From Podarcis liolepis (lineage: Eukaryota): a stretch of 64,000 nt of DNA. The notes below the pieces were generated by a model. The model did not search any database, was not told the origin of the DNA, and saw nothing but the letters and a program-made list of their open reading frames with translations. The translations under genes and the position numbers were made by a program. The stretch is taken from NCBI GenBank assembly GCA_965112155.1, contig OZ218105.1. The stretch is one strand, 5' to 3'. Positions 211 through 45,500 of the stretch are shown piece by piece (the first letter of the stretch is position 1; every line of letters starts with the position of its first letter).

Positions 211-366
211 NNNNNNNNNNNNNNNNNNNNNNNNNNNNNNNNNNNNNNNNNNNNNNNNNNNNNNNNNNNNNNNNNNNNNNNNNNNNNNNNNNNNNNNNNN
301 NNNNNNNNNNNNNNNNNNNNNNNNNNNNNNNNNNNNNNNNNNNNNNNNNNNNNNNNNNNNNNNNNN
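211..366. other. Assembly gap (run of N)
   Basis: 156 consecutive N. Confidence 0.99.
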
Positions 367-11927: not shown

Positions 11928-12289
11928 TCTCTCTCTTGGTCAAGACAGCTGGAAAAATTGTGTGGAGACACTTGCGTGCAGGGGACTTTCCAAAGTGGTC
12001 TGGCACTTTGGTCAGAATGACGTCTCCTCGGCTCCCTTCATGTTCCCCCGTCACCAGGGTGGGAACTGGGTATTCTTCTGAGGACAAGAGGGTAGCAATA
12101 AACGAGGGCTGTGCATTTCCAGGCTCTTTCCCTGCACCTTGCCCAACTTCTCTTGTATTTTTCCACTTGGGCCATGCCTCTCCTTCCCCCCACCCCTCTC
12201 CACATTTGGTTCCGCGCACCCCTTCTCCTCCTCTTCCTTCCCCAGCTCTCCTATTCTCTGCTTCTCCTTCTCCCTGCCTTCCTTTTGTT

Positions 12290-14560
12290 GCCCGGGCTCG
12301 CTATCCCGGACGCTGCAGGCCGCCTCGTCTGGCTCCGCAGCTCGCAGAGCCGCGTCACGTGCGTTAGTGACAGCCTGTCCCGGCGCGTCCCGGAGCACCG
12401 CGGGGCTCCCAATTGGTGCAGGAGCGGCTGTGCGGCCCTCCCCCTTTCCCTTCCTTCGCGCGCCCCCTGCTAGCAGCGCGCCGCGGGGTGGGAACGTCGA
12501 GGCAAAAGAGGCGGGCGGGGCGGGGCGAGGGGGCGGGCGCTGCCGATCAGCTGTTCGCCGGATTCTATAACAACAAAAGGCTCTGCGGGGAGCGCAGACT
12601 GGCCGGTGCAACAGGGCTCGGGGCGCCCGCAGGAGCAGCTTCCCCGCCATCTACCTCACTCCGCCGCCGTCCAGGCTCCGGATTTGCCCGGCTGCTTTGC
12701 GGACGGTGAGTGAAGGGCTGCGGGCGTCCTTTGTACTGGGTGCGTGTGGGTGTTTTTTGGCCACAAGTGACCTTAGGCGCGATATTCTTGGCGTTGGGTG
12801 CGCGTTCCGTTTGGATGCAGCGGGGGGGGGGGAGGGAGAGAAAAGGAAATCTGGTCTATTTTAAGAACTGGGCAAGGGGGATTCCCACCATCTCCTCCGC
12901 CTATAAAGTTTAGTATATTTATATATCTGGCTGCTGAGCAGAATCGCTTACCCACTGGCCCTTTCCTGCGTTCCGCTTTCTGGGAAGGGTCCGTCTCGTC
13001 CCTCTGCAAAGTATGCAGAGATGCGGGGAGGGGGGCGAATAACACCGGAGTTCATGCAGGGAGAACTAACTCTCAAAGTCTTCTCTTCTCTTCCTTCCCC
13101 CCCCCCCGGCTCTACTTCCTTAAAGGTAAATTACTGCGCGATCCTCCTCCCAGCTTTGTCCGTCGCTCGGCAGCGCCTTCCGACTGGGCTGCTCACAAAC
13201 CACTTGTGGCGTAGTTTTGCCAGCCAGCCTCGCAGCCAGCGAAGCCGCTTCCCTGGAAGCGAGCCCTGCAAAATTCAGTTGTTCCTACTTCCTGGTTAAT
13301 GAAACTGCTGCGGGTTTCATCTGAGGCTGAGATCGTTAAAAAAAACAGAAAAGAAAAAGCGTCTTATAGCTTGTCCTCTCGAGTACCTTAAGGGGTGTTT
13401 TCGTTTGGTGATGGTGGTGGGGTTGTTTTATTAAAATTCGCGGAATTAACTCTTATTTTCGTGAGATCTAGTAGTGCAGCCCATAGCCCGTTAAATATAA
13501 ATTAGTAGTTAAAAAAAATACACTATCCCTAACATACTAACTTGAAAGGAGAGCCCCACTGATTTCGGTGCGACTTTATATTTCAAATACTGTAAACTGC
13601 TCCTGTGAGTGCTCAGTGCCAAGTGATTTTATCCCGATGCGAGCTCGCATAGGATCGCATCCTTCAACCTTACTATCGTCAGATCTGTAGGATCGGGGCT
13701 CGGGATCCCCTTTTCAATATCAATTGCGGGCGGGCGCGTGGATCCCGGCAGCGTTCCGCGCGCGATCCTGCGGAATAATAATCCGGCGCGGACAAACTTT
13801 ATGTACCCGCGGAGAAGGGCGCGAGCGTTTGCCCGCCTGCCCTGCGCGCTCCGTCTCCGGAGCGGAGTTTCAAACTGCTGGCGAGAGAGGCGCAGGGTGG
13901 AGTCCGGCGCCCATCTGGGCGGGCGGAGAGCAGGGGACCTCCCTTTTCCCCCTAAAGGGCGGGGGTGAAGGTCGTCCTGCGGCCAGGGCCGCGGGGCGTG
14001 GACAGAGAGCTCTCCGGCCTTGGAGATGTCCTTTCCAAGCCAACTGCCCAGGCAGTGCAGCCGATCCACGCGCCTTGTGGATGCCCTCCGCTTCCTCTCC
14101 CCGCTTTCTACCCGGCCTTGCGGTTGGAGCAACCCCCCCTCCCTTTTGTCTCTGTCCTTGCCCGCCCCCTGGAGAGGGAGTGGGGGGACTGAGGCCGAGG
14201 AGGAGCTGGGGTTGCCTGATCCGCCCAAGGGGGCTGGAAAGGGATCGGGTTGCTTTCCCCCCGCCTCCCGCGTATCCTGTTTTGTTGACAGTGCCGAGAG
14301 ACCGCCCTTCCCTTGGTGTAAGGCTTCCGTCTCTTCCCGTCGGGGCGGATCTTGGACTCCGAAGTTGAGTCGGGTTCAGGTGTGTGACTAACCTCGCCGG
14401 AGCAGCCAAGCGGCGCCGCCCGGGGAAGAGGCAACTTGCGCGATCAAAACAAACCAGGAACTGGTGACTCACGGCCGCCAAGGGCGGGGAGAGGGGGGCA
14501 ATCCGGGTCGGCACCCCGAGGCGTGATTCCTGCCGAGGCCCCATCCTGAAGCCCAATATA
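12290..14560 (+). promoter_or_regulatory. TP53INP1: CpG island / promoter and non-coding exon 1 of TP53INP1
   Basis: Dense CpG; GTCACGTG E-box at 12354, CCAAT near 12409, GC boxes near 12513, TATA-like ctataac near 12565; donor ACG|gtgagt after 12705. Confidence 0.75.
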
Positions 14561-14614
14561 CATGAACAGACAAGAGCAAGCTATGAGCTCTGGTAAACAC
14601 GCACAATCCCCCCC

Positions 14615-14800
14615 CAGGGGTGCCAACTTAAATAAAATATTGGGGAGGCAGGTAAGCCCTGCCCTATATAATTGATCACAAGATGTGGCTCGCACACACC
14701 ATTTGAATGACAGTGCCTATCAACTTGGGGGGCCCTGACCCCCTCAAATATTTTATGGGGCCCCCGAAGGGACCTCAGCTCCTAGGAGGTGGTTCCTATG
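14615..14800 (+). mobile_element. hAT-type MITE (caggggtgccaac family)
   Basis: Degenerate TIRs; homologous to the fragment at 38138-38275. Confidence 0.6.
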
Positions 14801-16743
14801 AAACACACACATGGATAAGCAGTTGTGTAAGTCACTCTTTATGTAACTACAGTTAGGAAGTTGCCTTTGGCAGTGTTTCCCAAATTTTACGCACACACAC
14901 TACCATAGATCACTTGAAAACTGGCAGACCACTCAAGATTTCTCTGCCTGTAGTAATTGTGATGTGTCGTGCTAGACTTATTATTCTTAATTGCAGTTTA
15001 ATTGCTTTGTATGGTATTACGATTTACAGAATTCAGATTGCAATGCAATAAAATGTAAAAGCAGCAATAAAAATCAATACAGTATGGGCACAACCACAGA
15101 TCCACACTGTGGACAACCTGGATGAAGCTCTGGTTCATTGACCGCAGTTTGAGACCCCTGCCCATTGGTCCACCCAGTGTCTGCACTGATTGGCAGCAGC
15201 TCCCCAGGGTTTTTAGATGGAGACCTTTCCCAGCTTTACCTGGAGATGCCACCAGAACAAAGCTGGGACCTTCTGCTTTTGCATGCAGCTGCTGATCACA
15301 GACTTCATGGCTCCTCCCAATTGAGTATAGTGGGCATTCTGCTGTGCAACTTTCCAATAGGAGTTCCTGATGCTTTGTGGGGCAAGGAAGTTAGTTGTTT
15401 CCCCCCCCCCCCCTGTGTGTTTTAAAGTTTCACAAGTATTTATTTTTCCACAGAAGGCTCTAGTCTTTGGCAAACTGTTCTGGACTTGCATTTGTTTTGC
15501 TTTGCAAGAACATTTCACATTTGATGCAACCTCCGAGCATTTGTCTGATGCAACCTCTGAGCATTCTGATAGGCTTCCGAGGGCTTTTGGAGATGGTTTT
15601 GGGTGGGTGGGTGGAGAATGATTGCTTTTCAGCTCTTACGGTAGGCAGTTTCAAACTTCTAAGTTCTCTTTAAGACTTTTGCCCACCCATATAGTGGAAT
15701 GTGGTAGCAGAATTCTTCCATGGTAAAATTAACAATACCACTTCAAACTGCACACAGGGCAGGAATCGTTTTTTTTTAATCCTTCACTATGTTTATTGTA
15801 AATATCCTTTGATTTGCAGTCCATTCTTCATGGCCATCTTTTTCCTGTCTTTCAACATATCTGTGTCTCCCCTTAATTGGTGTCTGTTTCTGTCTCAGTG
15901 GTAACAAAAAACAATGCAAATGCAAATACAAATACAGTACAGTACTTTTTTTAAAAAAAAAAAAGATGGCACCCTCTAATGGCAGCCTGATATATCACAG
16001 TCTCTTCTGTTAACTTCATTCTCTTCTATATGTCGATCAGACCAAAATTGTGCTGATTGGATTAGAGGGAGCCAGCCATTGTTCAAGCTTTTGCAACCTG
16101 TTTTCAGTTTTCATGGAGCTGCCTTTGAAAGCAGTGAAAATCAACAAGAAGAGAAGTCCTGAATGGTGCAGAAAAATATTTTATCAAATGATTTACCTGT
16201 TGGCTGCTGCCTGCTGCACAGCTTTGAATGAGCTCGGCTTTGCAATGAGGTCTTTGCAATGACGCATCTCACTGCCTTGAGAGTGGTATCATTTTGGCAG
16301 TAGGCACAGATATACCTCTTTGCCCAGTCTTTGGTGGAGGGTTGAGGTGTACTGCACATCTGAATTAATGTTGCGGCTGCATATTTGGTTTTATGCTGTT
16401 TTAATAGTACTGTTTCATTTTTATTTAGAATGTGCATATTTCTGCCCTGGGCCTATCGGGTGAAGGGCAAACAATGCTTTACACTAAATAATCCACTCAA
16501 GACAATGCCCCCTCCCTGAGAGACCCTGGAGAATCTGCCAGCCTGAGCACAGGCCTGATGGGTGATCTGAATCTGCCCACTCATGTCTGAGAATCTCTCG
16601 ACAAGGCTTTTGCTTTTGGACAATGGGGTGGCTGCAGAGTTAAAAACTGAAGGGCTTATGGGGAAAAGGTGGAGGAGTTAACTGGGTGTTCTGTTGGTAC
16701 CTTTTAATCTATTGTTCTCCTGCCAAAAAAAGTCACTCTAGCC

Positions 16744-31927: not shown

Positions 31928-32639
31928 GTTTTAAACATCTAGGGAGCAAGGCCTGGTTTTGTTTGTTTTTCCTTTTCCCTTTGCAAGCCACTTTGAGGGG
32001 TTTTTTAAAAAACAATCAAGCGCTGTATAAACTTTGGTAAATAAATGCCAGTTGCAGGAAACTGCAGGAGAGAGTGCTCTTAGAATCATAGAACTGCCAA
32101 GTTAGAAGGGATCCCGTGGGTCATCTACTCCAGCCCCCTGCAATAAAGAAATCTGATAGTGCATTTGGAATACTTCTTTTGTCTTTAATCAATCTTGAGT
32201 TACAACACCCTTAAAATGAAGAGTCTCATGCTCTACGGATTGAGCAATCCTGGGTTATTCTTGCTTGAAGGCTTCCCGCAGGCAGACATCTGCCTGGCCA
32301 TCGTGAGAACAGACTGCTGGGCTACTAGGTGGGCTTACCTTAAGTCCTCGTCTTCCTTATAATGACTTACTAATAATTGTATACAGTACTCATCAGGATA
32401 CTGCCAGTACTTATTTACCTATAGATCGTATTCTATTACAGTCCCAAGCACTTTTTCCTTTCTTTTTCTCCTCACCCCTGCGAGAAATCTCCCCCCTCCC
32501 CCATTATGTCGAACATTTCTCGTGTTCCTGACCACATGCCAAAGCCTGGACACAGCCCTGCGCGCTGCAAGAAGGTCCAGCACCCCTTAACGGTGCTTTC
32601 ACAGTCCCTCCATCTTTGACAGCGGCCTTCCTCCTGGCT

Positions 32640-35400
32640 TCCCGCGAGCCGTGTTTACATTCTGCCGACAGGTCCACGTTGCCGAGCCATTCGGCCTTCT
32701 GATTGGCCGCGGCGCGCGGCGCGGCTCCGCCCAGAGGTGGAGCCCGACGTGGCGAGCTGTCTAAGCGCGCGTGTTGCTAATGCCAGGCCGAGAGCCGCGG
32801 CCGGCGCAGGAGCCGTTCTGGTTGCACGGGCTCCCGGGAACGCAGCTGACACGGCTTTGCAGGGTTAACGAGCTGTTAACCGGTATGTAAAAGACGCGCA
32901 ACAACGGGCTGAGAGGACGTTTGGGGAGGGAGGAGGGCTGGTTGCTTCCATAGCTGTCAACTTTCAGATTTGAAAATAAGGGATCGGCAGCCTCACCTGT
33001 CCTGGGGACAGTCTACGGGATATCTAACAATCCAGGATAGCAGCGGGAAACTGCGCTGGAATAAGGGAATTTCCCGCAAAAAAGGGAAGGTTGACAGCTA
33101 TGGTTACTTCCCCCACCTGCCTTGGCGGGGGGCTTCTCCCCTCCCGCCTCGGCTGTCAAAGCCCCATGGGTGCCAACTCTTTGGGACCCTGGGTGCCCGA
33201 GCACCCACCCAATTCCCCATGAAAGGGCCGGGCACCCACACATTTCGGGGCCAGGGCCTTTCATGCGCACTGCATGGCACCCACGGCTCCGGAGAACCAA
33301 CGATCACGGGGTCAAACTCTTGCAAAAGCCCCGTCGCGTCTCCGAGTCGCGGGCACAGCCGGTTGCCATCTACGACCGGCCTCGGAGGCGAGCGAGCATT
33401 TGGCGGGACTGGCGGGGGAAGCGAGACGTCCTCCAAAGGGGACACTCTTACGCAATGTCCCCCCCGGGGGCGGGGGAGAGAAGACGGACGGGGTGCGGGT
33501 ATGGCTGGGCGATGCGCGGGAGCGTGCACCGGGCGTGCCTAAAAAGCTGCCCTGCTGTCATTGCATATAGTATATTTTTGGTGTGTGTGTGTATATATAT
33601 ATTTAGTAGTGTTTCCCTCTCCGAGGGGAAAAAACCGCAACAGGAACGAGCCGGGGGTTCCTAATGTCTGTCCGCGGCTGGGAATCCGCGAGGTTCGTCC
33701 TTTCTGTAGCGCGCGGGGCGCCGGGCGCGCTCCACCTCGGGGTTCCGGGGCGGTCGGGCGGGAGAACTCGCAGCCCGGGAACTGCAGGCGGCGACGAGAG
33801 GGCTGAGCTGGGACCCAGGCCGGCGCATGCGCAGGCGGCGCCCTATATAAGCGCCTTGGCGCCGGCGCCAGCTGAGAACAGTCCAGGTTTGGGCGGCAGC
33901 GGCGGCTGAGGTGCGGTCTTGGGGGGTCTTCTCTATGGGGCGGGGGGGCGGCAATGCTCGGGAAGGAGCTGGATGGCGGGCGAGGGCAGCGAGGGCTGCT
34001 CGCGCCCTGCTGCTTTCGGCCTATATGGGGAGGGGGGCTGGCTTTTTAAAAATTCCCCCCTCCCTGCGTGTGGTGAATGTCCTGGCGAGGAGGGGGCTGA
34101 GGGTGCCGGGGCGCCGCTTAGGGGGCTGCCCCAGAAAAGCGCTGAGGGGGGGGGGAAGGCAGCGGGCGGCAGGGCTCCAGCGCCGGCTGGAGGAGGAAGC
34201 GGAGCCAGAAGGCGGGATGCCCGCCCTCCCAGCTCGCCGGCCGGGCTTTTTTTGGAGGGAGAATGAGGCGGCGGCGAGGAAAGAGAGGGGATCCCCCACC
34301 CATCCGGCCCGGGGGGGCCTCTCGGGGGCCGAGGTGGGGGGTGGCAAGGCGGGAAAGTGAGGTGTCTCCCCTGCAGCACATTGTGGGGGGGAGTTGCTCC
34401 CGGTTTTTCCTAGGGCGCCTCTGCCTTTTTTGGGGTGGGGGCGATGGGGGTCTCCCTATGGGGGACCCTTTGCACCCCCGCCCCACCCCCGGCAAACCTG
34501 TTCCTCTCGTCGGTGTGGTCTGGGAACTGGCTGGGTCGGCCTGCCCTTGCTGGGCGTGTGAGGCTTTTTTGGAGGGAGAGCGACTCCCTCCTCCGGGGCG
34601 GGGGGCGGGGAGCCCGCCTGGTGGCTTCCCGGGCTGACCCGAGAGCACTTGCCTCCGTCTTTCGCCCCCTGACCCTTCGGGGTGTTTTTGCGGGGGGGGG
34701 GTCTCCACAGAGGAAAAGGTGTGTTTCGGGCGGCGGAAGGGATCTTCCCCCTCCCCTGGAAGGCGGGAGAGGCAGGTTGGGGTGCGGGGTCCATTCTGCA
34801 GAAGCCCCCCGCTTTGGCTCTGGACTCGATTTATTGGGGGACGGCGGGAAGAGAGGGGGGCGCATCTTGCCTGGGGAGGGGGCTGTGTTTGTGGGTCTTT
34901 CCCTCTCTTGCTGTCTTGATGCAAGGAGGGGGGGGAGCAATCGGGGTTTCTACTCCTATCCCGTGCACCCCATCTGTAACATTTCCTCTTTTGCAACCCC
35001 AGTATATAAGGGGTCGTCTACTCAGCATATATAAGTGTAGGCGGGAAATGCTTTTCTTAAAAAGAGAGAGAGAGAGAGTGCTCTTGCCCCCCCCCAAAAA
35101 AACTCCCTCCGGTATCCCTCCCCCACTTTTTTTAAAACACTGTGCTCTTTTCTTCATTATTATTTTTTACGTTTCACCCTCTTAGGGCAAGCGGGAGTTT
35201 CACCCGCATGCTGGATGGAGGGTGGTGGCAGAGTCCAGCCTGCTGTTGCCGCCTCCTGCATTTACCCGCTTTCTGTAAATTGGCGCGGGCCGGAGAGCCG
35301 CGTATAGCTGGCTCGGCAGCTTGGGGGTGGGGTGGGGGGCTCCTGAAGCTGCTGCCCCCCCCCCTTCCCGCTTGGCAGGCAGCGGGGAGAACAAATGGCA
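32640..35400 (+). promoter_or_regulatory. CCNE2: CCNE2 CpG island / promoter with non-coding exon 1 (about 33870-33910)
   Basis: NRF1-like GCGCATGCGCA near 33823, TATATAA 33844-33850, E2F-type TTGGCGCC at 33856, further GCGGGAAA/TTTGGCGG sites; donor GAG|gtgcgg after 33910. Confidence 0.75.
32949..33102. mobile_element. 154-bp hAT-type MITE in the CCNE2 promoter
   Basis: TIRs catagctgtcaac/gttgacagctatg; 8-bp TSD gttgcttc/gttacttc. Confidence 0.8.
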
Positions 35401-36539
35401 GAAAGAGGAGGGGGCAGCTCGAGTCTTTGTGGTTTACTTAGTTCACTCAAAACAAAATGTGTGTCTTTGCAACAAGTCATCATAAGTGATAAGATCCTAG
35501 TGAAAGTACTGTAAAGCTTGGCAATCTCCTTGCATGTAGGATTTTGGTGTGTAAACTATATTCATGTACAGTAATAGCTGTTTATAGACATGCAAGTAGT
35601 CTCGGCTCCTGACAATGCTATGTATGGGGTTTGATTCTGAGCGCATGGGGCATACATATTTGCAAAATATGCAAACCAGCGCTGCTTATGATTGATGGGG
35701 GTACAAAACTTGCAAGTCGGCAAATCTTACCTTGGGACTACATGCTCATAGCAGAGTTCTCTGAGGAAGCAAATGGAATGGTGCCTGGAGCAAGGCATGA
35801 AGTGGAACAAAATGGCTACTGGCATTGATGCTGGGAGGCAGCAGATGGAAGCTGGTTGAACCTGAAATTGACCAGTGAGCACATGGATGATGAGAAAGGG
35901 TGACCTTCAGTTTTGTAAAGAACTCTTGCTTTGAGCTGAGATGGAGGCAATTAACACAGACCACCCTTACTAAGAGGGATTGTGGGGTAATGTACTGCCA
36001 GTTCACTTCTCTTAATTCAGGTGTGCAGGGTTTTTCAGGGACTGGAGGAACATGACTAATGTGGGCAGTTTGCCCAGATTTCCTGTTCCAAGCGCAGGAT
36101 TGTCACGAGGTAACAGGTGCCTGCCTCCCTGTGGAACACTTGTAGGCTCCTGGCTGTACATAAAAATGCCTTGCCCACGATGTTGGGCAGTTGCCATTTG
36201 GATGTTCTTGGTCTCTGCTACTTTCTGGAAATATCTTTGGGGTTTAGGCAGCAGGCATGCACACACTGGGAGCTGGACTTAATTTGAGGGGAAGGGCTGT
36301 AGCTCAGTGGTACAGTATCTGCTTTACACATTCAATCCCCAGCGTTTCCGGGTAGTGCTAGGAGACAGCCCTGCCTGAACACCTGGAGAGCCACTGCCAG
36401 TCAGTGTAGACAGTACTGAGCCAGATGGACCAATGGTCTGACTTGATGTAATTCATGAGCTAAACAGCACTTTGTATGTACTTTGGGTTAACCTATAGTC
36501 TTCTCTCATTTGCAGGCAACTATCTGGAATCCTAATAAG

Positions 36540-36553
36540 ATGTCAAGGCGCAG
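36540..36553 (+). CDS. CCNE2: CCNE2 exon 2 coding part (exon starts 36516)
   Basis: ATG TCA AGG CGC AG|gtaaac. Confidence 0.9.
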
Positions 36554-39500
36554 GTAAACATCACTTTTATAATATGCTAACTGTATACAGTCTGACTGCA
36601 GCCCATAAATATATGCCATCATAAAAATGGTTAGTCTTTAAGGGGCCACAGTGTATGTATAGCAATACTCTCTACTGCTGTCTTGATGGGAAAATGTATT
36701 TACACTTCCACAGTAGTCGTTTACAAGCCAAGCTGCACCAGCCCTGCCAGGATATGTCTCCTCAAGAACTGCAGCTGCCAGAGTCTCTTCAGAACAGAAA
36801 AAGGAAAGCAATGCAGGTAAGTAGGAATTGAAACGGTCTCCTGGAGCCAGATGTGGTTAAGAATATGAGCAGGATTGCCTTGTTCAAGCTGAAACAAGAA
36901 TTCACGGCATTGATATTGGTAAAACCACCTTCCTCTTGGCCTCATCCTCACACCTGAAATGTAGAGATAATGGGTGGAATTCAGCACCACACTATTACAA
37001 ATGTTCCGTCTCTGCAAACATATCAACTTGCCAGATGGGACAGTGGCACACTGTTCTAGGGGTTCTCCCACCCACTCCAGAGCCAATTTCAGGGCAGTGG
37101 CGTAGCGTGGGGGGTGCCAGGGGTGCCGGCCGCACCGGGCGCAACATCTGGGGGGGCGCCCGCCGCCTCCGGAGTCGCCGAAGAGCCTCGGGCGCAGGCT
37201 ATAGCAGAGCCCCATGTCTCGAGAAGGAGGAAACCCCGGCCATGGGCGCTGTCCCCAGGTGGTGCAGCAGGAGCTAGGTGGCGAAGGGGAGCCCGGGGGA
37301 GCGGAGGCGCCGCGGGGACACGGCTCGGGAGCTGCCGCTGAGGAGCCAGAGCATCGTCCCCGGGAGGAGCGGTGGTGGCGGCGGCGGCGGCTGCTACTGC
37401 AAAGCAGGGAGAGAAGGAGGCGGCGGCGGGGGGGAGCCAGGCAGGGAAGTTGCTGCTGGGGATGAAGAGGCGGCGGCGGCGGGAGACGGACTTCTCTCCC
37501 TCTCTGGTGCTGCTGGCGTGATGCGCTCGCCAGCCCACCGGCCCCTCCTGAGCGGGATATGGGTGGGCGGACGGGGTGGGTGGGGGAGAGGCGCCGGGCC
37601 TGCCTCGTGCCCTGACAGGAGCCGCCGCTGCGCCCGCGGGCGCCCTTGACAGGGCGCCCCTCATGCCGCCTCAAGAGGCGTTGGGAGGCAGCGAGACTCC
37701 GCCGGGCCCCGCCCCTCACTCCGCGCTCGGCTTCAGGGCTGTCTTGCGAGGGGGCGGCGGGAAAAGGCTCTGAGGAGAACCTCGCTGGCTGTCCCGCCGC
37801 GTCGCTTTTCCTCACGTCGTTTTTCCATTCCCTTGAGGGGACGGGGAGGTGAAGGGAGCCCGCACGTGGCGAGTCGTCGGTGGAGGTAGAGAAACCACGC
37901 ACATTAGATATTAATAATAATAATAATAATGCTTTGAAATTTAAGACTCCCCCCCCCCAAGGAAAAGGCACTTTCTTGCCCTGCCCGTGGACCAGGAGGT
38001 CGTGGCGGGCGAGGCCTTCAGCAGCGGGGCCCTTATTTGCGCTGCCAGCCTGACCTTCACCCTCTTACATATAGAGAGGAAAGGAGACGCGGAGGTGCAA
38101 AGGCTTACGGGGCAGAAGTAAGCCCCGCTGAGTTCATCAGGGGTGCCAACGTGAATACAGTATGATATTGGGGGGGGGGAGGCAAGTAAACCCCGCCCTG
38201 CATAGTTGATCACATTGGCAATGCCCATCAACTGGGGGGCTGGCCCCCTCAAATGTTTTATTGGGGGGCCTGAAGCAGCGGCGTGGCGTGGGGGTGCGGG
38301 GGGGCTGGGCGCAACGTCTTGGGGGGGGGGGCGCGCTCGCACTCAAGTGCTAAAATCCACGGGTTAGGGGGCGCAAATTACTTGCCTTGCCCCGGGTGCT
38401 GACAACCCACGCTACGCCACTGTTTCAGGGACATACAGTACATGAGGGGAGGGGAGGGAATCCCCATTGTGGAAGCCTTTGAGCAGGCCTTCTGGGGATG
38501 GGATTTGTTAGATGAACCCCACACCATATTTGTAAACAAGGCAGACATCGGCACCTGGCACTCTCAAGTGGTTGCCAAGAGGCTGCTGATGTTGAAGTCT
38601 CGAATTCCTTGGTCTGCTTCTTCCCCCACCCCATCCCAATTTTGGTTTGTGTGGAGCTTCCCCAACATTTTATATTTTCCACAATAACCAAAGCAGCTCA
38701 TTGTTTCTGTGGTTTGCAGTCATCTGCCACAGATCACAGCTCTGTTGCTGCCTGTCCACGCTGCCAAGTCAAGGGAAGGGGTGCTGACACTAAGCAGCAC
38801 TTTGTCAGGGAAGATTTTAAACCTCGTCCTGAATTATCACTGTTTAATAGCTGTGATCAGTGGTTGGGCATATGTCGCCAGTAAATGACTTTCAAAAATG
38901 AATAGTTGTTCACTGACGGCTTTAATGCTCCTATTTTTGAGGGAGGGATTTGAAATTGAGGGAGCCCTTGATGTACCAGGAGAATTTGGCTTCACTTGGT
39001 TGCTGCTTTGCTCTTAATCAAGGTGCATCTGTGTCTGTTTTCCAAAGGACCCCACGAGAACAGAAGAGATCAACATGAGACATCAGTATGAAATTAAGGT
39101 AATAATGACCTGCGTAACCATTGATTTTTAACTTAAGTTGGTTTGCATTCTTCAGTATGTATGAGAATTTAGATTGTTAATGTGTCCATTGTGAGCAGGA
39201 GGTTCTTCACTTTTTGTCAGGGAAAGCAGCTTTTTTCTTTTTAACTAAATACATAAGGGAGAATTAATGAATCCAGCTGCATAGTGTGTGATTTGTATTC
39301 ATTTTGTTGTGTTGGCTGCTGCAGTTTGTGTTCAATGAATATTTCACCACGGAAAAACTTACTTTCAACTTCCAGGAATGTATAGTGTTAATTATATCAC
39401 TTCCCAATATCCCACCTAATGTCTTGCTGCTGCAAGGGTTTGGATAAAATGCTTTAGGGTTTGATTTGCAAGGCCTAGTAAACATTAGCTGGTTGATGGT

Positions 39501-42500
39501 GTACCTTATTTTTCGCCCTATAGGACGCACTTTCCCTCCTCCAAAAATGAAGGGGAAATGTGTGTGCGTCCTATGGGGCGAATGCAGGCTTTCGCTGAAG
39601 CCTGGAGAGCAAGGGGGGTCGGTGCGCACTGACCCCTCTCGCTCTCCAGGCTTCAGGAAGCTATCTGCTAGCCGTGGGAGATGCAGCTCTGTTCTGGGGG
39701 CTGGAGTCGGGGGAAGCTCAGGCTTCCCCAGCCCCGCACCTGGGGGGAAAATAATTTTTTTCCCCTTTATTTCCCCCCCAAAAAACTAGGTGCGTCCTCT
39801 GGGGCGAAAAATACAGTATTCTATGTGACAGTGAAAATGTTTCAAAAGGCTGGGACAAATTCTGCTACTCATAAACTATCTTGCTTGGTGTTGTATGTAT
39901 TTTTCTCATGCTAGCTCTTAATATCTCATTTGTAGAGTTGTTGGCCATCTACAATATCAGGCGGCATCTCCCCTTGTATTATAATAGAAACTCCTCACAA
40001 AGAAGCGACAACCACTGATTTTTCCAGATTCAAAAAATACAGGTTCAGAAACCTCTTCATAAATCCATCACCTTTACCGGAACTTAGGTAAGTTACCTAT
40101 AACCAAAAGCAATTGTGATGCTGCTATACTTTGATATGTCAGCAAAGCGAATGTAGTGCAACCCCCCTGTGTTCTTCACCAATTTGTATTGGTGGGTAGT
40201 CTTTGATTTGGAGCTAGTGACATATAGAAAACACAATGAGGAACACCACTAATAAAACCGTCTTGTTTTAGTCCTTGGTCTGAATGCTTTGCCTATCATC
40301 AAGGGCAATATGTGAGCTGTGAAATTTTGATGGACAAATTATATTCCAAGGTGTCATCTGTGTTTGATGGAAATTTCATATAAATCTGGCATTCTATGAA
40401 AAATGTGTTAAGATCATGTCTGCAAGTATTGTTGCTGTGTAGTCTCTTACACTGCTAACTTTTTGGAACTGCACTGACTAGAATAGTCTTCCTCAGTACA
40501 GTGCCCTCCAACTTAGATGTGCTACCTCCCCGTATACACCACCTCTCCCCATATAAACATACCTGGACTCTGCGATTATCATACGAGGCCCTTCTTTGTG
40601 GGCCCCCCTCCATGAGAGGCCCAGAGGTTGGCAACACAGGAATGGGCCATTTCTGTGGTCACTCCCCATTTGTGGAATTTCCCCCCCTGGGTGGCTCACC
40701 TGGCGCTTTCACTACACATCTTTAGGCACCAGGTGAAAGCATTGATAACCATGCTGTGAATATTTTATTGCCTTTGAAATGGGTTTGGGGGAAGAGGGTT
40801 ATTGATTTGTTTTTGTTCTATTACGTATTTTTTGTTCTCATATTTTTACGTTGTGAAACCACCATGTGATCTTTGGATGAAGGGTGGTATACAAATTTAA
40901 TCCATAATGAGAGGACTCACAGGAACTGTAGTCTGAAGCATCTGAAGGGCATCAAATTGGGGAAGACTGGACTACAAGAAGGTGGCGAGATTGGGAACAA
41001 CACATTCATGCATATAGTAAAGAGAAGCACCTATACCGTATTTTTCCATGTATAAGACGTCCCCTATTTTGGGGGACTCCAAATTAAGAAAATGGGGAGG
41101 ATTACTCAGAGTTGTTTAGCTTTTTTGTGGGGGGAAATTGCCGGAAATCGCTCACCCGCCACTGACAATTGCATGCATTGCTGAAGACACGCAGTCGCCA
41201 AATGGCCACCCTATTGCCGCAGCGGCAGCCAATCACCAACAGCCCTTCTCACAGCTACCAATCACCCACACTATCGCCACTGTGAATCTCCTGCTCACGG
41301 CTGTGACCAATCGCACCCCCCCCCCGCACTACCCATGTATAAGACGAGGGCTAATTTTAAAGCTCATTTTTTAATTAAAAACCCTTGTCTTATAGATGGA
41401 AAAGTATGGTATGTGTTGGTTTTCATGTCCTTTCTCTTTCCCTGCCCTGCTTGAGTGAAACTGACCATTGTTGTGAAACTGCCCAATTGTCAACCTAGTC
41501 CTAATAGTCATTCATTGTTGTCAGTCAGAAAAATCATCTGTTACAGTTTTGCTTAATGACAAAATGACAATAATTTGAAGCAGTTGTTGAAAACTTACTG
41601 TCTTCTGACAAGTCTCTATAGCCACTTAAAAGCTCAGTGAATTGATTACTGAGTAATATCTACCTCTTTTCAGTTTTTTCCCTTGAAGGCATGCAACATT
41701 GACCATCCTTGATTGGATTTACAAACCTCAAAGCAACTCCATTTGATCAGGGGCAGCAGCTGAAGGGAAGAGCAAGCACCTTTTATTATGCTTGTCATTG
41801 GCATAATTAAATCATAGAAATGGTGCAGGGGTGAAGGATTGAAGCCTCATCCCAGGGATGTTACCTCAATCTCTTATCTTGTTGGGAGTAGGAAGTAGCC
41901 ATGCTGTGAGACCTTTCAGTTGAGAGGGGCTAAAATGCTATAAAGAAATGTCCCATCCCTTCAGCTCCCTTTAAAGTCTGAAAAGTCAGATACAGCCATC
42001 TGCATCATATGTAGTCTTCAGGCAAATGGACTTTCCTTATCTGTTCTACCTCAGATATTTTTTTTTAAAAAAACCTGTATTTCATGAAATCCAAACAAGC
42101 TTCGAGTAGAACCCCTTTGGAAAACTAAGGTCATTAGAGTTTGGAGACTAGAAATAATACATTGAATGCACTAAATCCAAGCATTTGGCTTCATGCCATT
42201 GAAGTCCAATTTTTGCTGAGACCACGTATTTTATGTCTTTTTAAAAATAATCTGGAATTTAAAATGTCTGTCTTTGATTTTAGCTGGGGAAATTCTAAAG
42301 ATGTCTGGTTCAACATTCTCAAAAAGGAGAACAAATATTCTCACTGTAAGCATTTCACATCTCTACACTCCAACTTGCAGCCACACATGAGATCAATTCT
42401 ATTGGACTGGCTTCTGGAAGTGAGTATTGAACTTATAAATGTAATGTGTGTATAAAGGACAGTCCTGAGAAGTAGCAAGACTGACCCAGAGTGCTTCATC

Positions 42501-45500
42501 CCCCCCTCTTTTAAGTATTAAGCTTGTTTATATTCTGCTTTTTCAAATTGTGCTGAAAGCACCTCACAAGTTTAGTCAGCATATCAGTATATAGCAGGGG
42601 TCACCAAGGTTTATCTTGCCTGGGCCGGATCGGTCCCACAGAGATCCCTCTGTGGGCCAGATTGGTGTGCATGTGAGTGCCCGAGCCCACGATTTTCGGC
42701 ATCTGCACATGCGCAGATGCCATTTTCAGCGTCTGCGCAGATGCCATTTTCAGTGCCGCAGAAGCAAGTCTCCACACCGTGCTGGTTTAGTGCAGCGCAT
42801 GAGTGGGCAGCTCAGTTCAGGGGCGGCTTGGGGGCAGGTCAAACGACCTCCACAGGCCACTTCTGGCCCATGGGCCTTAGGTTACTGACCCCTAATATAT
42901 AGGCACAACAAAAACATAGGCATAAATATATCCCCTGCTGAATTACAACTTTTTAAAAATGTTTTGTCTCGCTGTTTGTAGTATAGTGACTGTGAATAAA
43001 CAAAGCTTATTCTGTAACAGGTATGTGAAGTATACACGCTCCATAGGGAAACTTTCTACTTGGCACAAGACTTTTTTGACAGATTCATGCTGACTCAAAA
43101 TAATTTAAACAAAACCATGCTTCAGCTCATAGGAATTACAGCCCTGTTCATTGCTTCCAAGCTTGAGGTAAGTAGCTGTCAGTGAAACCATTCTGCCGTT
43201 GACAATATAGCATTTTAAACCCATAATTGTGCTGCATGTCCTTTACAGGCAAAGGCCCATCCCAGTATAGCAGCTGAGGAAGAAATGGGTCTTTTTTCTT
43301 TTGATTAAAGTAGTTTGGCTTATTACTGAGGAAAATGGAAGGTCTGAGTTGCAGAGTTTGCACACTGAAAGAGCAGCTCTTGGAAGTCTGTGTGTGTGCT
43401 CACAAATGATAGCCCTAATTGCCATTAGCAAATAGCTGCCTGTGTTCTTAGCCCTCAGAGTTCTTACTAGGATTCTAATCACGGGGAAATGCATCCCTCA
43501 GTAACTGAAGGCTGGGAGTTTCCTAATACAGTACTTAGCTGAGACTGAACACTTTATTTTGTATCCTTTCTGCTTTACAACTTGCCTTTTCACCAAGAAC
43601 CTCAAGGTGACCTGCATCGTTTCCCCCATTTTATTCTCACAACAACCCTGTTAAGCTGAGAGGTGGTGACTGGTGTAAGCTCCCGCAGTGAACTGAATGG
43701 GGGTTTGAACCCTGGTACTCACAAGGGACGCGGGTGGCGCTGTGGTCTAAACCACTGAGTCTAGGGCTTGCCGATTGGAAGGTCGGCGGTTCGTAGCTCA
43801 GTCCCAGCTCCTGTCAATCTAGCAGTTCGAAAGCACGTCAAAGTGCAAGTAGATAAACAGATACCGCTCCAGCGGGAAGGTAAATGGCGTTTCCGTCCAC
43901 TGATCTGGTTTCGCCAAAAGTGGCTTAGTCATGCTGGCCTCATGACCCGGAAAAACTGTCTGCAGACAAATGTCAGCTCCCTCGGCCAGTAAAGCGAGAT
44001 GAGCGCCGCAACCCCAGAGTCGTTTGCGACTGGACTTAACTGTCAGGGGTCCTTTACCTTTTTACTCCCAATTCTAGTCAGAAACTCCAACCACTACCAT
44101 ACTGGCTTTTGCTAAGACTTGCTAAAAGAAGAGCACCGATATGTATGCCTAGCAGGCCAAACATGTCAACATCATTTGAATGATGCAACATGTTTTCGTT
44201 GTAAACTTCACCATCTTTTAATGCACTCTATGGGCCGGGCCTGTACATCTTAAAATGTTTCAATTAAGCTGGCAACTGATGAGATCTGTAAAGATCTCAA
44301 GCACAGCTTAGGTTGGGGACATGGTAAAGGACTTGGTTCTAATCGTCTGGCTTCAAATTTCACCTCTGACTCCTGCTTTGTGACGGTGGTGCTTTGCAAG
44401 TCAGACCTGGGCAAGTGACAGTGGTTCAGTGAAGCAGCTTTTGGACTGCCCTGTGCAATGGGCCTTAGGATTTCATGGCGTTGCCAGTGGGCTCATGATA
44501 TGAGAGTTTGCACAGTAGTACCACTTCTGTGAAGTTTCTTCTCCATGTGTGGGGATCAGTGCATAACCGTAGTGGCTGAGGATCTATCTCAGCGAGTGCT
44601 TGGCTCTTTGCTTTTTCAAGTACTTGCCCACTCCTACATGGAAACAAGGATTTGCAGCTGAGCCTATAAGTTGGCATGCTAATGGCTGCTCTCCCATGGG
44701 TGGTAACAGGAGCCTAAAAGCATCTGAATCTAATTTGTGAAATTGAAATAGCTGTGGTATGCAGAATAGGGTTGTAGGAGAATGGATCAACAAGTCTGTA
44801 AGCCCTGTTGGATTTGCTGTGGTTTGTTCTAACATTCTGTCTTTTTCTTCTTCCTTTAAGGAGATTTATGCTCCCAAACTACAGGAATTTGCCTATGTTA
44901 CTGATGGTGCTTGTAGTGAAGATGATATTATAAGAATGGAGCTCATTATATTAAAGGTAACAAAATGAAGATGCTGACCATTTTAGCACATATTTAAGAG
45001 TCTGCATCCTAGGAATTACTCTATTGGATGGGTAGCTAACATGGTGCCTTCCAGATGTTTTAAGTGCAGTTCCTATTACTCTGACCATTGGCCATGTTAC
45101 CTGCTCTTGATGGAAATTGAAGTCCAAAACATCTGGGGGGGGGGTTATCATATTTGCTCCTCCTACTCTATTGGCTTCTTAGGCAGAGCAGATCGTATTT
45201 ATTTATTAGCAATGTCTCCAAAATTTGGAATCTGACTCTGATGTGTACCTTGAAAGCTGCTTGGATACACTCTGTGAAAAGAGTGGATCCATTTTAAGCT
45301 TTGTATTTTACAGAAGATATTTCTTGACCACCATCTCAGGGCTGGAAAGAGTTGGAGCTATGTATAAAGCAGCTAAACATCTCATGCCAGTGTATACATC
45401 CTGGAATGCTCTAACAGTACCCTCTGGGATAAGAGAATTGCCTGTGACTTGAGCAACTTTACTTGATTTTACATAAGAACTGGTTTTGCTTGGCATTCTC

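What the first reader, a model, noticed from the sequence alone, without database searches (positions are those of the whole stretch)
37087..38430. Pack-type hAT transposon that captured the GNAL (XL-Golf) promoter and first exon and landed in CCNE2 intron 3
Seen: a 1328-bp insert (37095-38422) has perfect 17-bp TIRs (cagtggcgtagcgtggg) and a perfect 8-bp TSD (tttcaggg), and encodes no transposase. Its interior is an undecayed CpG island inside an otherwise CpG-poor intron. On the minus strand, an ATG at 37215 gives [19 protein letters not shown], cut off at the element end. Known: 8-bp TSDs with short CAG-starting TIRs are typical of hAT elements. From memory, the extra-long isoform of GNAL (G-alpha-olf) begins [13 protein letters not shown], and GNAL is not part of the TP53INP1-CCNE2-INTS8 block. 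Gene-fragment capture by TIR elements (Pack-MULE-like) is well known in plants and far less described in vertebrates. Inference: the cargo includes upstream repeats and promoter-like DNA and has no poly(A), so capture was DNA-mediated. Perfect ends and retained CpGs suggest a recent insertion, making this a mobile CpG-island promoter module.
Basis: partly seen in the sequence, partly recalled or inferred. Interest (0 to 1): 0.92.

Follow-up and report, generated by a model that had tools for sequence, protein, structure and literature searches.

The report
Cargo-carrying hAT transposon in CCNE2 intron
A 1.3-kb transposase-less hAT transposon has recently jumped into an intron of the lizard cyclin E2 gene, carrying the first 19 codons of the olfactory G-protein gene GNAL and about 1 kb of CpG-rich DNA that does not appear to be GNAL's; it is one copy of a multi-copy, gene-fragment-carrying (Pack-type) family, a kind known in animals but rarely seen still moving.

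Summary
The perfect 17-bp inverted ends, the perfect 8-bp target duplication, the CpG-rich interior, the lack of a transposase and the minus-strand peptide are all present.

New evidence makes a real, recent insertion very likely. Contigs from three related organisms run straight from 37086 to 38423. That is an exact empty site with one copy of tttcaggg, in flanks only 1.4-1.7% diverged.

The GNAL call is right at protein level. [19 protein letters not shown] is 19/19 identical to the start of turtle GNAL isoform X1, and 18/18 to the same isoform in a lizard. These were the only two hits among 5.8 billion proteins.

The "captured GNAL promoter" is not supported.
- The GNAL-derived stretch seems to be only about 62 bp (37160-37221). 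Relatives' contigs carry a different sequence upstream of -6 from the ATG.
- A short variant of the element ends at the same point.
- The remaining ~1.05 kb is a mosaic of unknown origin that includes a fragment of another hAT-like repeat and a second, complete MITE.
- The cargo is multi-copy in all three relatives, so capture predates this insertion and happened elsewhere.

The scan also noted, unchecked, a second GNAL-carrying hAT on another piece of this genome.

Verdict: a recently transposed member of a multi-copy Pack-hAT family. This is a new member of a known kind.

The parts
37087..37094 (.). Left copy of the 8-bp target-site duplication TTTCAGGG
   Evidence: Relatives' contigs hold only one copy (table 8).
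37095..37159 (+). Left arm of a very abundant hAT-type MITE, including the 17-bp TIR at 37095-37111
   Evidence: Similar to the internal copy at 38276-38334 (D2/D4/D6). Thousands of relatives' contigs match up to 37153-37159 and then jump to 38353 or run on into other sequence (tables 5 and 7).
37160..37221 (-). GNAL (extra-long isoform) fragment: 6 nt of 5'UTR, the ATG at 37215-37213 and about 19 codons ([19 protein letters not shown])
   Evidence: 19/19 identical to Mauremys GNAL X1 and 18/18 to Zootoca GNAL X1. The right boundary comes from the loose end at 37221, the unitig breaks at 37223 and the short variant joint 37220->38361. Each boundary is good to about 2 nt.
37222..37907 (.). CpG-rich filler of unknown origin (GC about 70%, GC boxes, a CACGTG, (GGC)n runs)
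   Evidence: No Pfam, Rfam or GNAL match. Present in relatives at about 3-30 times single-copy contig depth, with depth uneven between sub-pieces in organism F.
37908..37930 (.). (ATA)n microsatellite inside the cargo
   Evidence: Contigs of relatives break here.
37931..38137 (.). Further filler of unknown origin, with lower GC
   Evidence: Relatives' contigs covering 37938-38149 have 0-4 differences.
38138..38275 (+). Fragment of another repeat that begins CAGGGGTGCCAAC (a hAT-like end)
   Evidence: 74-79% identical to window 14615-14769. Summed depth in relatives rises to about 70-370 times single copy here (table 2).
38276..38422 (+). Complete internal MITE of the same family. Its own left TIR is degenerate (CAGCGGCGTGGCGTGGG, 38276-38292). 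Its right TIR (38406-38422) serves as the right end of the whole element.
   Evidence: The canonical short MITE in relatives is 37095-37154 + TTAGGG(C) + 38353-38422 (tables 5 and 5c).
38423..38430 (.). Right copy of the TSD TTTCAGGG
36700..36828 (+). Host exon of the E-type cyclin (…[14 protein letters not shown]…KRKAMQ), about 260 bp upstream of the insertion. Its start coordinate is approximate.
   Evidence: The next coding exon found is at about 39960-40090.

Best explanation
This is one recently transposed copy of a multi-copy, non-autonomous hAT element of the Pack type.

Structure:
- Its ends belong to a MITE family present at very roughly 10^4-10^5 copies in this lizard group.
- Between a truncated left MITE arm and a complete right MITE lies a mosaic of filler DNA.
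- The filler holds a 62-bp piece of the first coding exon of the extra-long GNAL isoform (6 nt of 5'UTR plus 19 codons, antisense to CCNE2). It also holds about 0.9 kb of CpG-rich DNA of unknown source and a fragment of a second hAT-like repeat.

Inferred history:
- The mosaic was built before these species split. The likely route is error-prone gap repair or template switching after excision or at a stalled fork (filler-DNA or FoSTeS-type capture), in at least two steps, with the GNAL piece first.
- A hAT transposase supplied in trans then cut and pasted the composite around the genome, using the outer 17-bp TIRs.
- One such event placed it in the CCNE2 intron and made the 8-bp duplication. 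This happened after the window's lineage separated from three relatives about 1.5% diverged from it.

Shown versus inferred:
- Shown: the structure, the GNAL identity, the empty sites and the presence of the cargo elsewhere in relatives.
- Inferred: the hAT transposase partner, the capture mechanism, the order of captures and any effect on CCNE2.
For: - Ends and duplication: TIR/TSD anatomy as described.
- Empty sites: X1 record 1, X6 record 23 and X11 record 10 each run from 37086 directly to 38423 with adjacent record coordinates. They skip 1336 bp, which is the element plus one TSD. Flank differences are 9/534, 9/643 and 7/508 (table 8).
- GNAL identity: in a search of 5.8e9 proteins only two hits came back, both GNAL isoform X1. 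Both begin with the same 18-19 residues.
- GNAL piece is short (all): a loose end lies at 37221 in X1, X6 and X15, with species-specific variants of one sequence. X15 has depth on 37195-37263 but none on 37264-37332. Unitigs start at 37223 in all three DNA runs. There is a joint 37220->38361.
- Multi-copy composite: the cargo contigs' depths are 2.5-6x (X1), 13-21x (X6) and 3-30x (X11) those of the single-copy flanks. X6 record 25 bridges 37172-37251 at depth 334 against 23.
- Abundant MITE: summed depth on the arms is 1.6e5-1.8e6 against 11-23 for single copy.
- Mosaic nature: 38138-38275 matches another repeat at 14615-14769.
- No transposase or other domain.
- Precedent: animal Pack-TIRs, mostly hAT, including a 5'UTR capture that became multi-copy (PMC8277862). 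Filler-DNA uptake by Anolis hAT elements (PMC3014272).
Against: - No reads from the window's own individual were available, so the filled junctions rest on the assembly alone.
- Contig depth is only a rough proxy for copy number, as the tool itself warns.
- The second GNAL-carrying copy in this genome is an unchecked first-reader note.
- No autonomous hAT with these TIRs was seen.
- The TSD fits the hAT nTnnnnAn preference (recalled from memory) at position 2 only.
Confidence: 0.72

Rival explanations
1. One reading: one DNA-level capture of a contiguous block, the GNAL XL promoter plus 5'UTR plus the start of exon 1. On this reading all of 37160-38275 is GNAL upstream DNA.
For: The GNAL start codon and 19 codons are exact. 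The adjoining DNA is a CpG island, as expected for the XL first exon. X6 record 25 shows 37172-37251 contiguous in a relative.
Against: - That bridging contig is at multi-copy depth, so it reflects the transposon family and not the gene.
- A different sequence adjoins 37221 in three runs, with 122 nt of it in a probable RNA contig.
- The probable RNA run has no cover on 37264-37332.
- A short variant ends at 37220 (all).
- 38138-38275 is a dispersed repeat.
Confidence: 0.12
2. Macrotransposon origin. Two nearby MITE copies in direct orientation (the left one truncated) flanked an ordinary genomic segment. The transposase used the outer left and outer right ends, so the whole interval became mobile. 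On this reading the cargo is one contiguous donor locus rather than stitched filler.
For: The element ends in a complete MITE with its own left TIR at 38276-38292 and has a separate left arm at 37095-37159. The repeat fragment abuts the internal MITE exactly where similarity to the 14.7-kb copy stops, as if that MITE had once inserted into that repeat.
Against: The interval contains a 62-bp GNAL exon piece out of its genomic context, so at least one filler event is still needed. Sub-pieces of the cargo have very different depths in organism F, and a short GNAL-only variant exists. Both point to stepwise assembly.
Confidence: 0.15
3. Assembly artefact: a chimeric join or collapsed repeat rather than a real insertion.
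For: None of the four laid runs shows the filled junction, and no run held more than 56% of the sampled words.
Against: A misjoin would not create a perfect 8-bp duplication flanking perfect 17-bp TIRs whose removal restores exactly the relatives' sequence. The laid runs are other organisms, so they are not expected to hold the insertion.
Confidence: 0.02
4. The 19-residue match is not derived from GNAL. It would be either a chance match or an annotated GNAL X1 start that is itself a mis-predicted transposon fragment.
For: The database-wide E-values for the 40-residue query region are only 0.07 and 0.2.
Against: - Identity is 19/19 and 18/18, starting exactly at Met1, in a turtle and a lizard. 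These were the only hits in 5.8e9 proteins.
- Both hits are full G-alpha proteins with PF00503.
- A long XL G-alpha-olf isoform is recognised in mammals (PMC12408007).
- By my memory, the human form also starts MGLCYSLRP.
Confidence: 0.02

Closest known systems
Animal Pack-TIRs, especially the multi-copy Pack-hAT-N8_XT of Xenopus tropicalis (Tan et al. 2021, PMC8277862)
   Same: A non-autonomous hAT element encloses a short piece of a host gene's 5' end (there 291 bp of the CAPSL 5'UTR). It was then amplified by transposition, with distinct TSDs, and orthologous sites in an outgroup are empty. Multi-copy cases tend to be GC-rich.
   Different: - This one is a mosaic of several fillers, with only 62 bp traceable.
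- It carries a second complete MITE inside.
- It is in a squamate. The only lizard in that survey (anoCar2) scored 0 Pack-TIRs because almost no TIR elements were annotated.
- The parental locus was not located here.
Pack-MULEs of rice and other plant Pack-TYPE elements
   Same: Transposase-less TIR elements that carry gene fragments, often several from different loci. By my memory (Jiang et al. 2011 PNAS) they are biased to GC-rich 5' ends of genes, and they amplify.
   Different: They belong to a different superfamily (Mutator, 9-11 bp TSD, long TIRs). They are in plants, and thousands per genome are documented. Here only one copy was verified.
Anolis carolinensis hobo-N and other non-autonomous hAT families with 'filler' genomic DNA (Novick et al. 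2010, PMC3014272)
   Same: Lizard hAT non-autonomous elements with conserved ends and very variable interiors, made by incorporation of extraneous genomic DNA that includes fragments of other TEs. The families are young and recently active.
   Different: The TIR here (CAGTGGCGTAGCGTGGG) is not among the TIRs of that paper's table passages returned by a search for 'CAGTG'; the full table was not read. That paper reports TE fragments and anonymous DNA, not host exon pieces. The species group is different.
Maize Ac/Ds: chimeric Ds elements with filler DNA, and Ac/Ds macrotransposons (from memory: Rubin & Levy 1997; Huang & Dooner 2008)
   Same: These are hAT elements whose excision-gap repair inserts short patches copied from ectopic templates. 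Pairs of nearby ends can also mobilise the DNA between them.
   Different: A plant system that has been shown experimentally. Here the mechanism is inferred from structure only.

Membership tests
hAT superfamily (non-autonomous member) | 8-bp target-site duplication | tested here: met
   TTTCAGGG on both sides, and a single copy at the empty site in three relatives.
hAT superfamily (non-autonomous member) | Short TIRs (about 10-25 bp) beginning YARNG (consensus recalled from memory) | tested here: met
   17-bp perfect TIR starting CAGTG.
hAT superfamily (non-autonomous member) | Weak TSD preference nTnnnnAn (recalled from memory) | tested here: inconclusive
   T at position 2 fits, but position 7 is G and not A. 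One site cannot test a preference.
hAT superfamily (non-autonomous member) | An autonomous partner encoding a hAT (DDE plus hAT dimerisation domain) transposase with the same ends | not testable with these tools
   There is no such ORF in the window's element, and the rest of the genome could not be searched.
Pack-TIR / Pack-hAT (Tan et al. 2021 sense) | TIR-element termini enclosing non-TE host sequence, with no transposase | tested here: met
   The 62-bp GNAL exon piece lies between MITE arms. No Pfam domain was found.
Pack-TIR / Pack-hAT (Tan et al. 2021 sense) | Parental copy of the captured sequence unambiguously identified in the same genome | not testable with these tools
Pack-TIR / Pack-hAT (Tan et al. 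2021 sense) | Multi-copy status: several insertions with different TSDs | tested here: inconclusive
   Cargo contigs sit at 2.5-30x single-copy depth in three relatives. A second copy in this genome is an unchecked note (s1-844853). No second TSD was read.
   19/19 and 18/18 identities from Met1.
   A different sequence adjoins position -6 in X1, X6 and X15. The probable RNA run has no cover on 37264-37332. Unitigs break at 37222/37223. This is indirect, because the GNAL locus itself was not read.
   tblastn with both GNAL X1 proteins finds only residues 1-19. All other hits are low-complexity noise.

The most novel reading that the evidence does not exclude
This copy may be the visible tip of a lineage-wide burst. 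A hAT MITE present at 10^4-10^5 copies would have repeatedly picked up CpG-island and 5'-exon fragments of many genes. The scan holds 34 unchecked notes of this kind in this genome, naming PRKAR2A, UBE2G1, TAL1, PPAT and others. The family would still be transposing. That would make it a vertebrate counterpart of rice Pack-MULEs, scattering CpG-rich and possibly promoter-active modules and ready-made start codons into genes such as CCNE2 and next to olfactory receptors.
Probability: 0.35. Interest if true: 0.75.

Novelty: new member of a known kind. Interest (0 to 1): 0.5.

Why it matters
Gene-fragment capture by cut-and-paste transposons is well documented in plants. In animals it has been catalogued once (370 cases in 100 genomes). 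Nearly all of those are single-copy relics, and squamates were in effect not surveyed.

This copy has exact empty sites in three close relatives, and its cargo is multi-copy in all three. That shows such an element can be mobile in a living lizard lineage. It offers a system for studying how filler DNA is acquired and whether transposed CpG-rich modules keep promoter activity or stay unmethylated.

For this locus, the practical point is a 1.3-kb CpG-rich insert 260 bp from a CCNE2 coding exon. No functional effect has been shown.

Tried and rejected
The GNAL locus could therefore not be read.
- The search of earlier findings by sequence gave nothing.
- Rfam at a permissive threshold found no RNA family in 36500-39000. 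SnoRNA, snRNA or rRNA-type cargo is therefore unlikely.
- Pfam found nothing in six element ORFs.
- tblastn with two GNAL X1 proteins found no further GNAL coding sequence in the window.
- Literature searches found no paper holding the TIR string or describing Pack-hAT in lizards.
- I considered spending the remaining large protein searches on ORFs of the CpG-rich filler. I did not, because none has a convincing ATG-led, non-low-complexity frame. The origin of that filler stays unknown.
- The 6-base resemblance between 38269-38274 (cctgaa) and the reverse complement of the TSD was judged a coincidence, because that internal junction is already present in relatives' copies.
- The 164-codon antisense ORF from 37215 to 36724 is real as an open frame, but nothing shows it is expressed.
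- The CCNE2 exons were searched one by one by reference.
Full report
**1. What is in the sequence**

The element spans 37095-38422 (1328 bp).
- Its ends are a perfect 17-bp inverted repeat, CAGTGGCGTAGCGTGGG (I2).
- With up to three mismatches this motif occurs only three times in the 64-kb window, against 0.02 expected. The third occurrence is an internal left-end-like copy at 38276-38292.
- TTTCAGGG directly flanks both ends.
- The interior has GC 65% and CpG o/e 0.76. The surrounding intron has CpG o/e 0.17-0.28.
- Six ORFs of the element have no Pfam match, and there is no Rfam match.
- The minus-strand ATG at 37215 opens [19 protein letters not shown].

**2. Host context**

- On the + strand there is an exon encoding ...[14 protein letters not shown]...KRKAMQ that ends near 36828.
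- A further exon lies at about 39960-40090 ([22 protein letters not shown]...).
- Cyclin-box exons at 42258-42437, 43018-43167 and 44855-44959 hit Pfam Cyclin_N. One of them (43018-43167) was searched against solved structures and is closest to cyclin E1.
- TP53INP1-like exons lie upstream at about 19.0 and 20.7 kb.
- Calling the gene CCNE2 and the intron 'intron 3' rests on my memory of the human protein. It is consistent with everything seen.

**3. Is the insertion real and recent?**

I laid Logan contigs of three DNA runs from three related organisms (coded A, E and F) on 36850-38900.
- In each run one contig runs from 37086 straight on to 38423 with adjacent contig coordinates: X1 record 1, 671->672; X6 record 23, 675->676; X11 record 10, 1280->1279 on the minus strand.
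- These contigs lack exactly 1336 bp, which is the element plus one copy of the octamer (table 8).
- Their flanks differ from the window at 9/534, 9/643 and 7/508 positions.
- The insertion is therefore younger than a split of about 1.5%, or it is polymorphic.
- An assembly artefact would not produce this pattern.
- None of the runs comes from a carrier of the insertion, so the filled junctions still rest on the assembly alone.

**4. Is the cargo GNAL?**

I searched residues 253-292 of the long minus-strand open frame against 5.8 billion proteins, so that candidate length matched full G-alpha proteins.
- Only two hits came back, both 'guanine nucleotide-binding protein G(olf) subunit alpha isoform X1'. 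One is from the turtle Mauremys reevesii and one from the lizard Zootoca vivipara.
- Their sequences begin [23 protein letters not shown]... and [22 protein letters not shown]....
- Identity is thus 19/19 and 18/18 from Met1.
- A long XL isoform of G-alpha-olf is recognised in mammals (PMC12408007).

**5. How much of the cargo is GNAL?**

Only about 62 bp, for these reasons.

*Left boundary.* The abundant MITE copies of the relatives match the window up to 37153-37159. They then either jump to 38353 (the short canonical MITE, with TTAGGG(C) between the arms) or continue GCTCGCACTC..., as in the internal copy (tables 5, 5c and 7). The GNAL codons start at 37160±2.

*Right boundary.* Four observations agree.
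- Contigs in X1, X6 and X15 match up to 37221, which is six bases upstream of the ATG. They then continue with CGGAACCGACG(A/G)GCTGTGCGCGCG(T/C)CCGGG. This carries small species-specific differences, as expected of a single orthologous locus.
- In X15, a small probable RNA assembly with no cover on the intron flanks, this extension is 122 nt long. The next bin of the window (37264-37332) has zero depth.
- In all three DNA runs the unitigs covering the cargo start at 37223, which marks a branch point.
- One contig in X6 joins 37220 directly to 38361. That is a short element holding the GNAL piece alone.

The simplest reading is that the alternative sequence is the real GNAL 5'UTR and that the original capture was 62 bp. 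I put this at about 0.8. tblastn with both GNAL proteins finds nothing beyond residue 19.

**6. The rest of the cargo**

- 37222-37907 is CpG-island-like, with GC boxes and (GGC)n runs. No recognisable coding start was found.
- 37908-37930 is an (ATA)n run.
- 38138-38275 is 74-79% identical to a repeat at 14615-14769 in the same window. That repeat begins CAGGGGTGCCAAC, an end reminiscent of the hAT TIRs CAGGGGTCCCCAAAC listed for Anolis.
- 38276-38422 is a whole MITE of the same family as the ends.
- In organism F the cargo sub-pieces have very unequal contig depths (39.5, 417, 159 and 133 against 14 for single copy). In organism E they are even (295-480 against 23), and in organism A they are lower (29-67 against 11.5).
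- Depth is only a rough guide, as the tool warns. Even so, the cargo is clearly present more than once in all three relatives, none of which has this insertion.
- X6 record 25 bridges the junction between the GNAL piece and the filler at about 14 times single-copy depth.
- Relatives' cargo contigs differ from the window by 0-2.5%.
- The composite is therefore an established, young, multi-copy family, and the CCNE2 copy is one of its transpositions.
- The scan's unchecked notes report another GNAL-carrying hAT next to an olfactory receptor on another piece of this genome (s1-844853, s1-844910).

**7. Mechanism**

*Shown:* the ends and duplication typical of hAT, the exact empty sites, and a mosaic interior with a second left end.

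*Inferred:*
- Mobilisation in trans by a hAT transposase that recognises the outer TIRs.
- Origin of the interior by template switching during repair of an excision gap or at a stalled fork. Tan et al. argue this for animal Pack-TIRs, with gap filling for single-copy ones and fork switching followed by transposition for multi-copy ones. Novick et al. describe 'filler DNA' of this kind in Anolis hAT elements.
- The CGC-rich similarity between the MITE interior (GCGC(GC)TCGC) and the GNAL piece (CCGCCGCC) at 37157-37167 could have served as microhomology. This is suggested by MITE contigs aligning a few bases into the GNAL piece (table 3, positions 37160 and 37164).

A macrotransposon origin, with two nearby MITEs moving together, remains possible for the last step but cannot explain the isolated 62-bp exon piece. 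With only an exon-internal 62 bp of GNAL, whether the template was DNA or RNA cannot be decided.

**8. Consequences for the host**

- The GNAL piece is antisense to CCNE2.
- From its ATG an open frame of 164 codons runs out of the element and across the cyclin exon.
- The insert places a CpG-rich kilobase 260 bp from that exon.
- No expression data exist for a carrier, so any promoter or antisense effect is speculation.

**9. Comparison and novelty**

- Pack-type hAT elements in animals are known: 208 of 370 Pack-TIRs were hAT.
- Only four of those 370 were multi-copy, three in a frog and one in an alligator.
- The one lizard genome surveyed had almost no TIR annotation and scored zero.
- No paper in the library mentions this TIR or Pack-hAT in lizards.

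This is therefore a new member of a known kind, not a new kind. Its main value is as a verified example, with empty sites, of what the scan's many unchecked notes suggest may be a large and recent burst in this genome.

Noticed in passing
window 37095-37159 and 38276-38422 (family level, seen in runs X1, X6, X11): The MITE that supplies the ends is extremely abundant in all three related organisms. Summed contig depth is 1.6e5-1.8e6 against 11-23 for single-copy flanks, which very roughly means 10^4-10^5 copies. Its canonical short form has telomere-like TTAGGG(TTAGGG) motifs in the middle.
   Followed up: partly
window 14615-14769: A second copy of the repeat that begins CAGGGGTGCCAAC, which is a hAT-like terminus. 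It is 74-79% identical to 38138-38275 inside the element and sits at the edge of the 12-15 kb CpG island.
   Followed up: partly
window 36724-37215, minus strand: A 164-codon open frame starts at the captured GNAL ATG, passes through the element's left arm and overlaps the cyclin exon in antisense. This was also noted by the scan as s1-844931. There is no evidence of expression.
   Followed up: partly
window 12001-15000 and 32001-35000: Two native CpG islands (CpG o/e 0.56-0.98). From their positions they are presumably the promoters of the TP53INP1-like gene (exons at about 19.0 and 20.7 kb, + strand) and of the cyclin E2 gene.
   Followed up: no
window 37369-37391 and 37467-37483: (GGC)n runs in the cargo attract very deep contigs from the probable RNA run X15 (depth about 810, joint 37384->37469). 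These most likely come from unrelated, highly expressed GGC-repeat transcripts and should not be read as expression of the element.
   Followed up: no
window 211-366: A run of 156 N (an assembly gap or masked stretch), left untouched.
   Followed up: no
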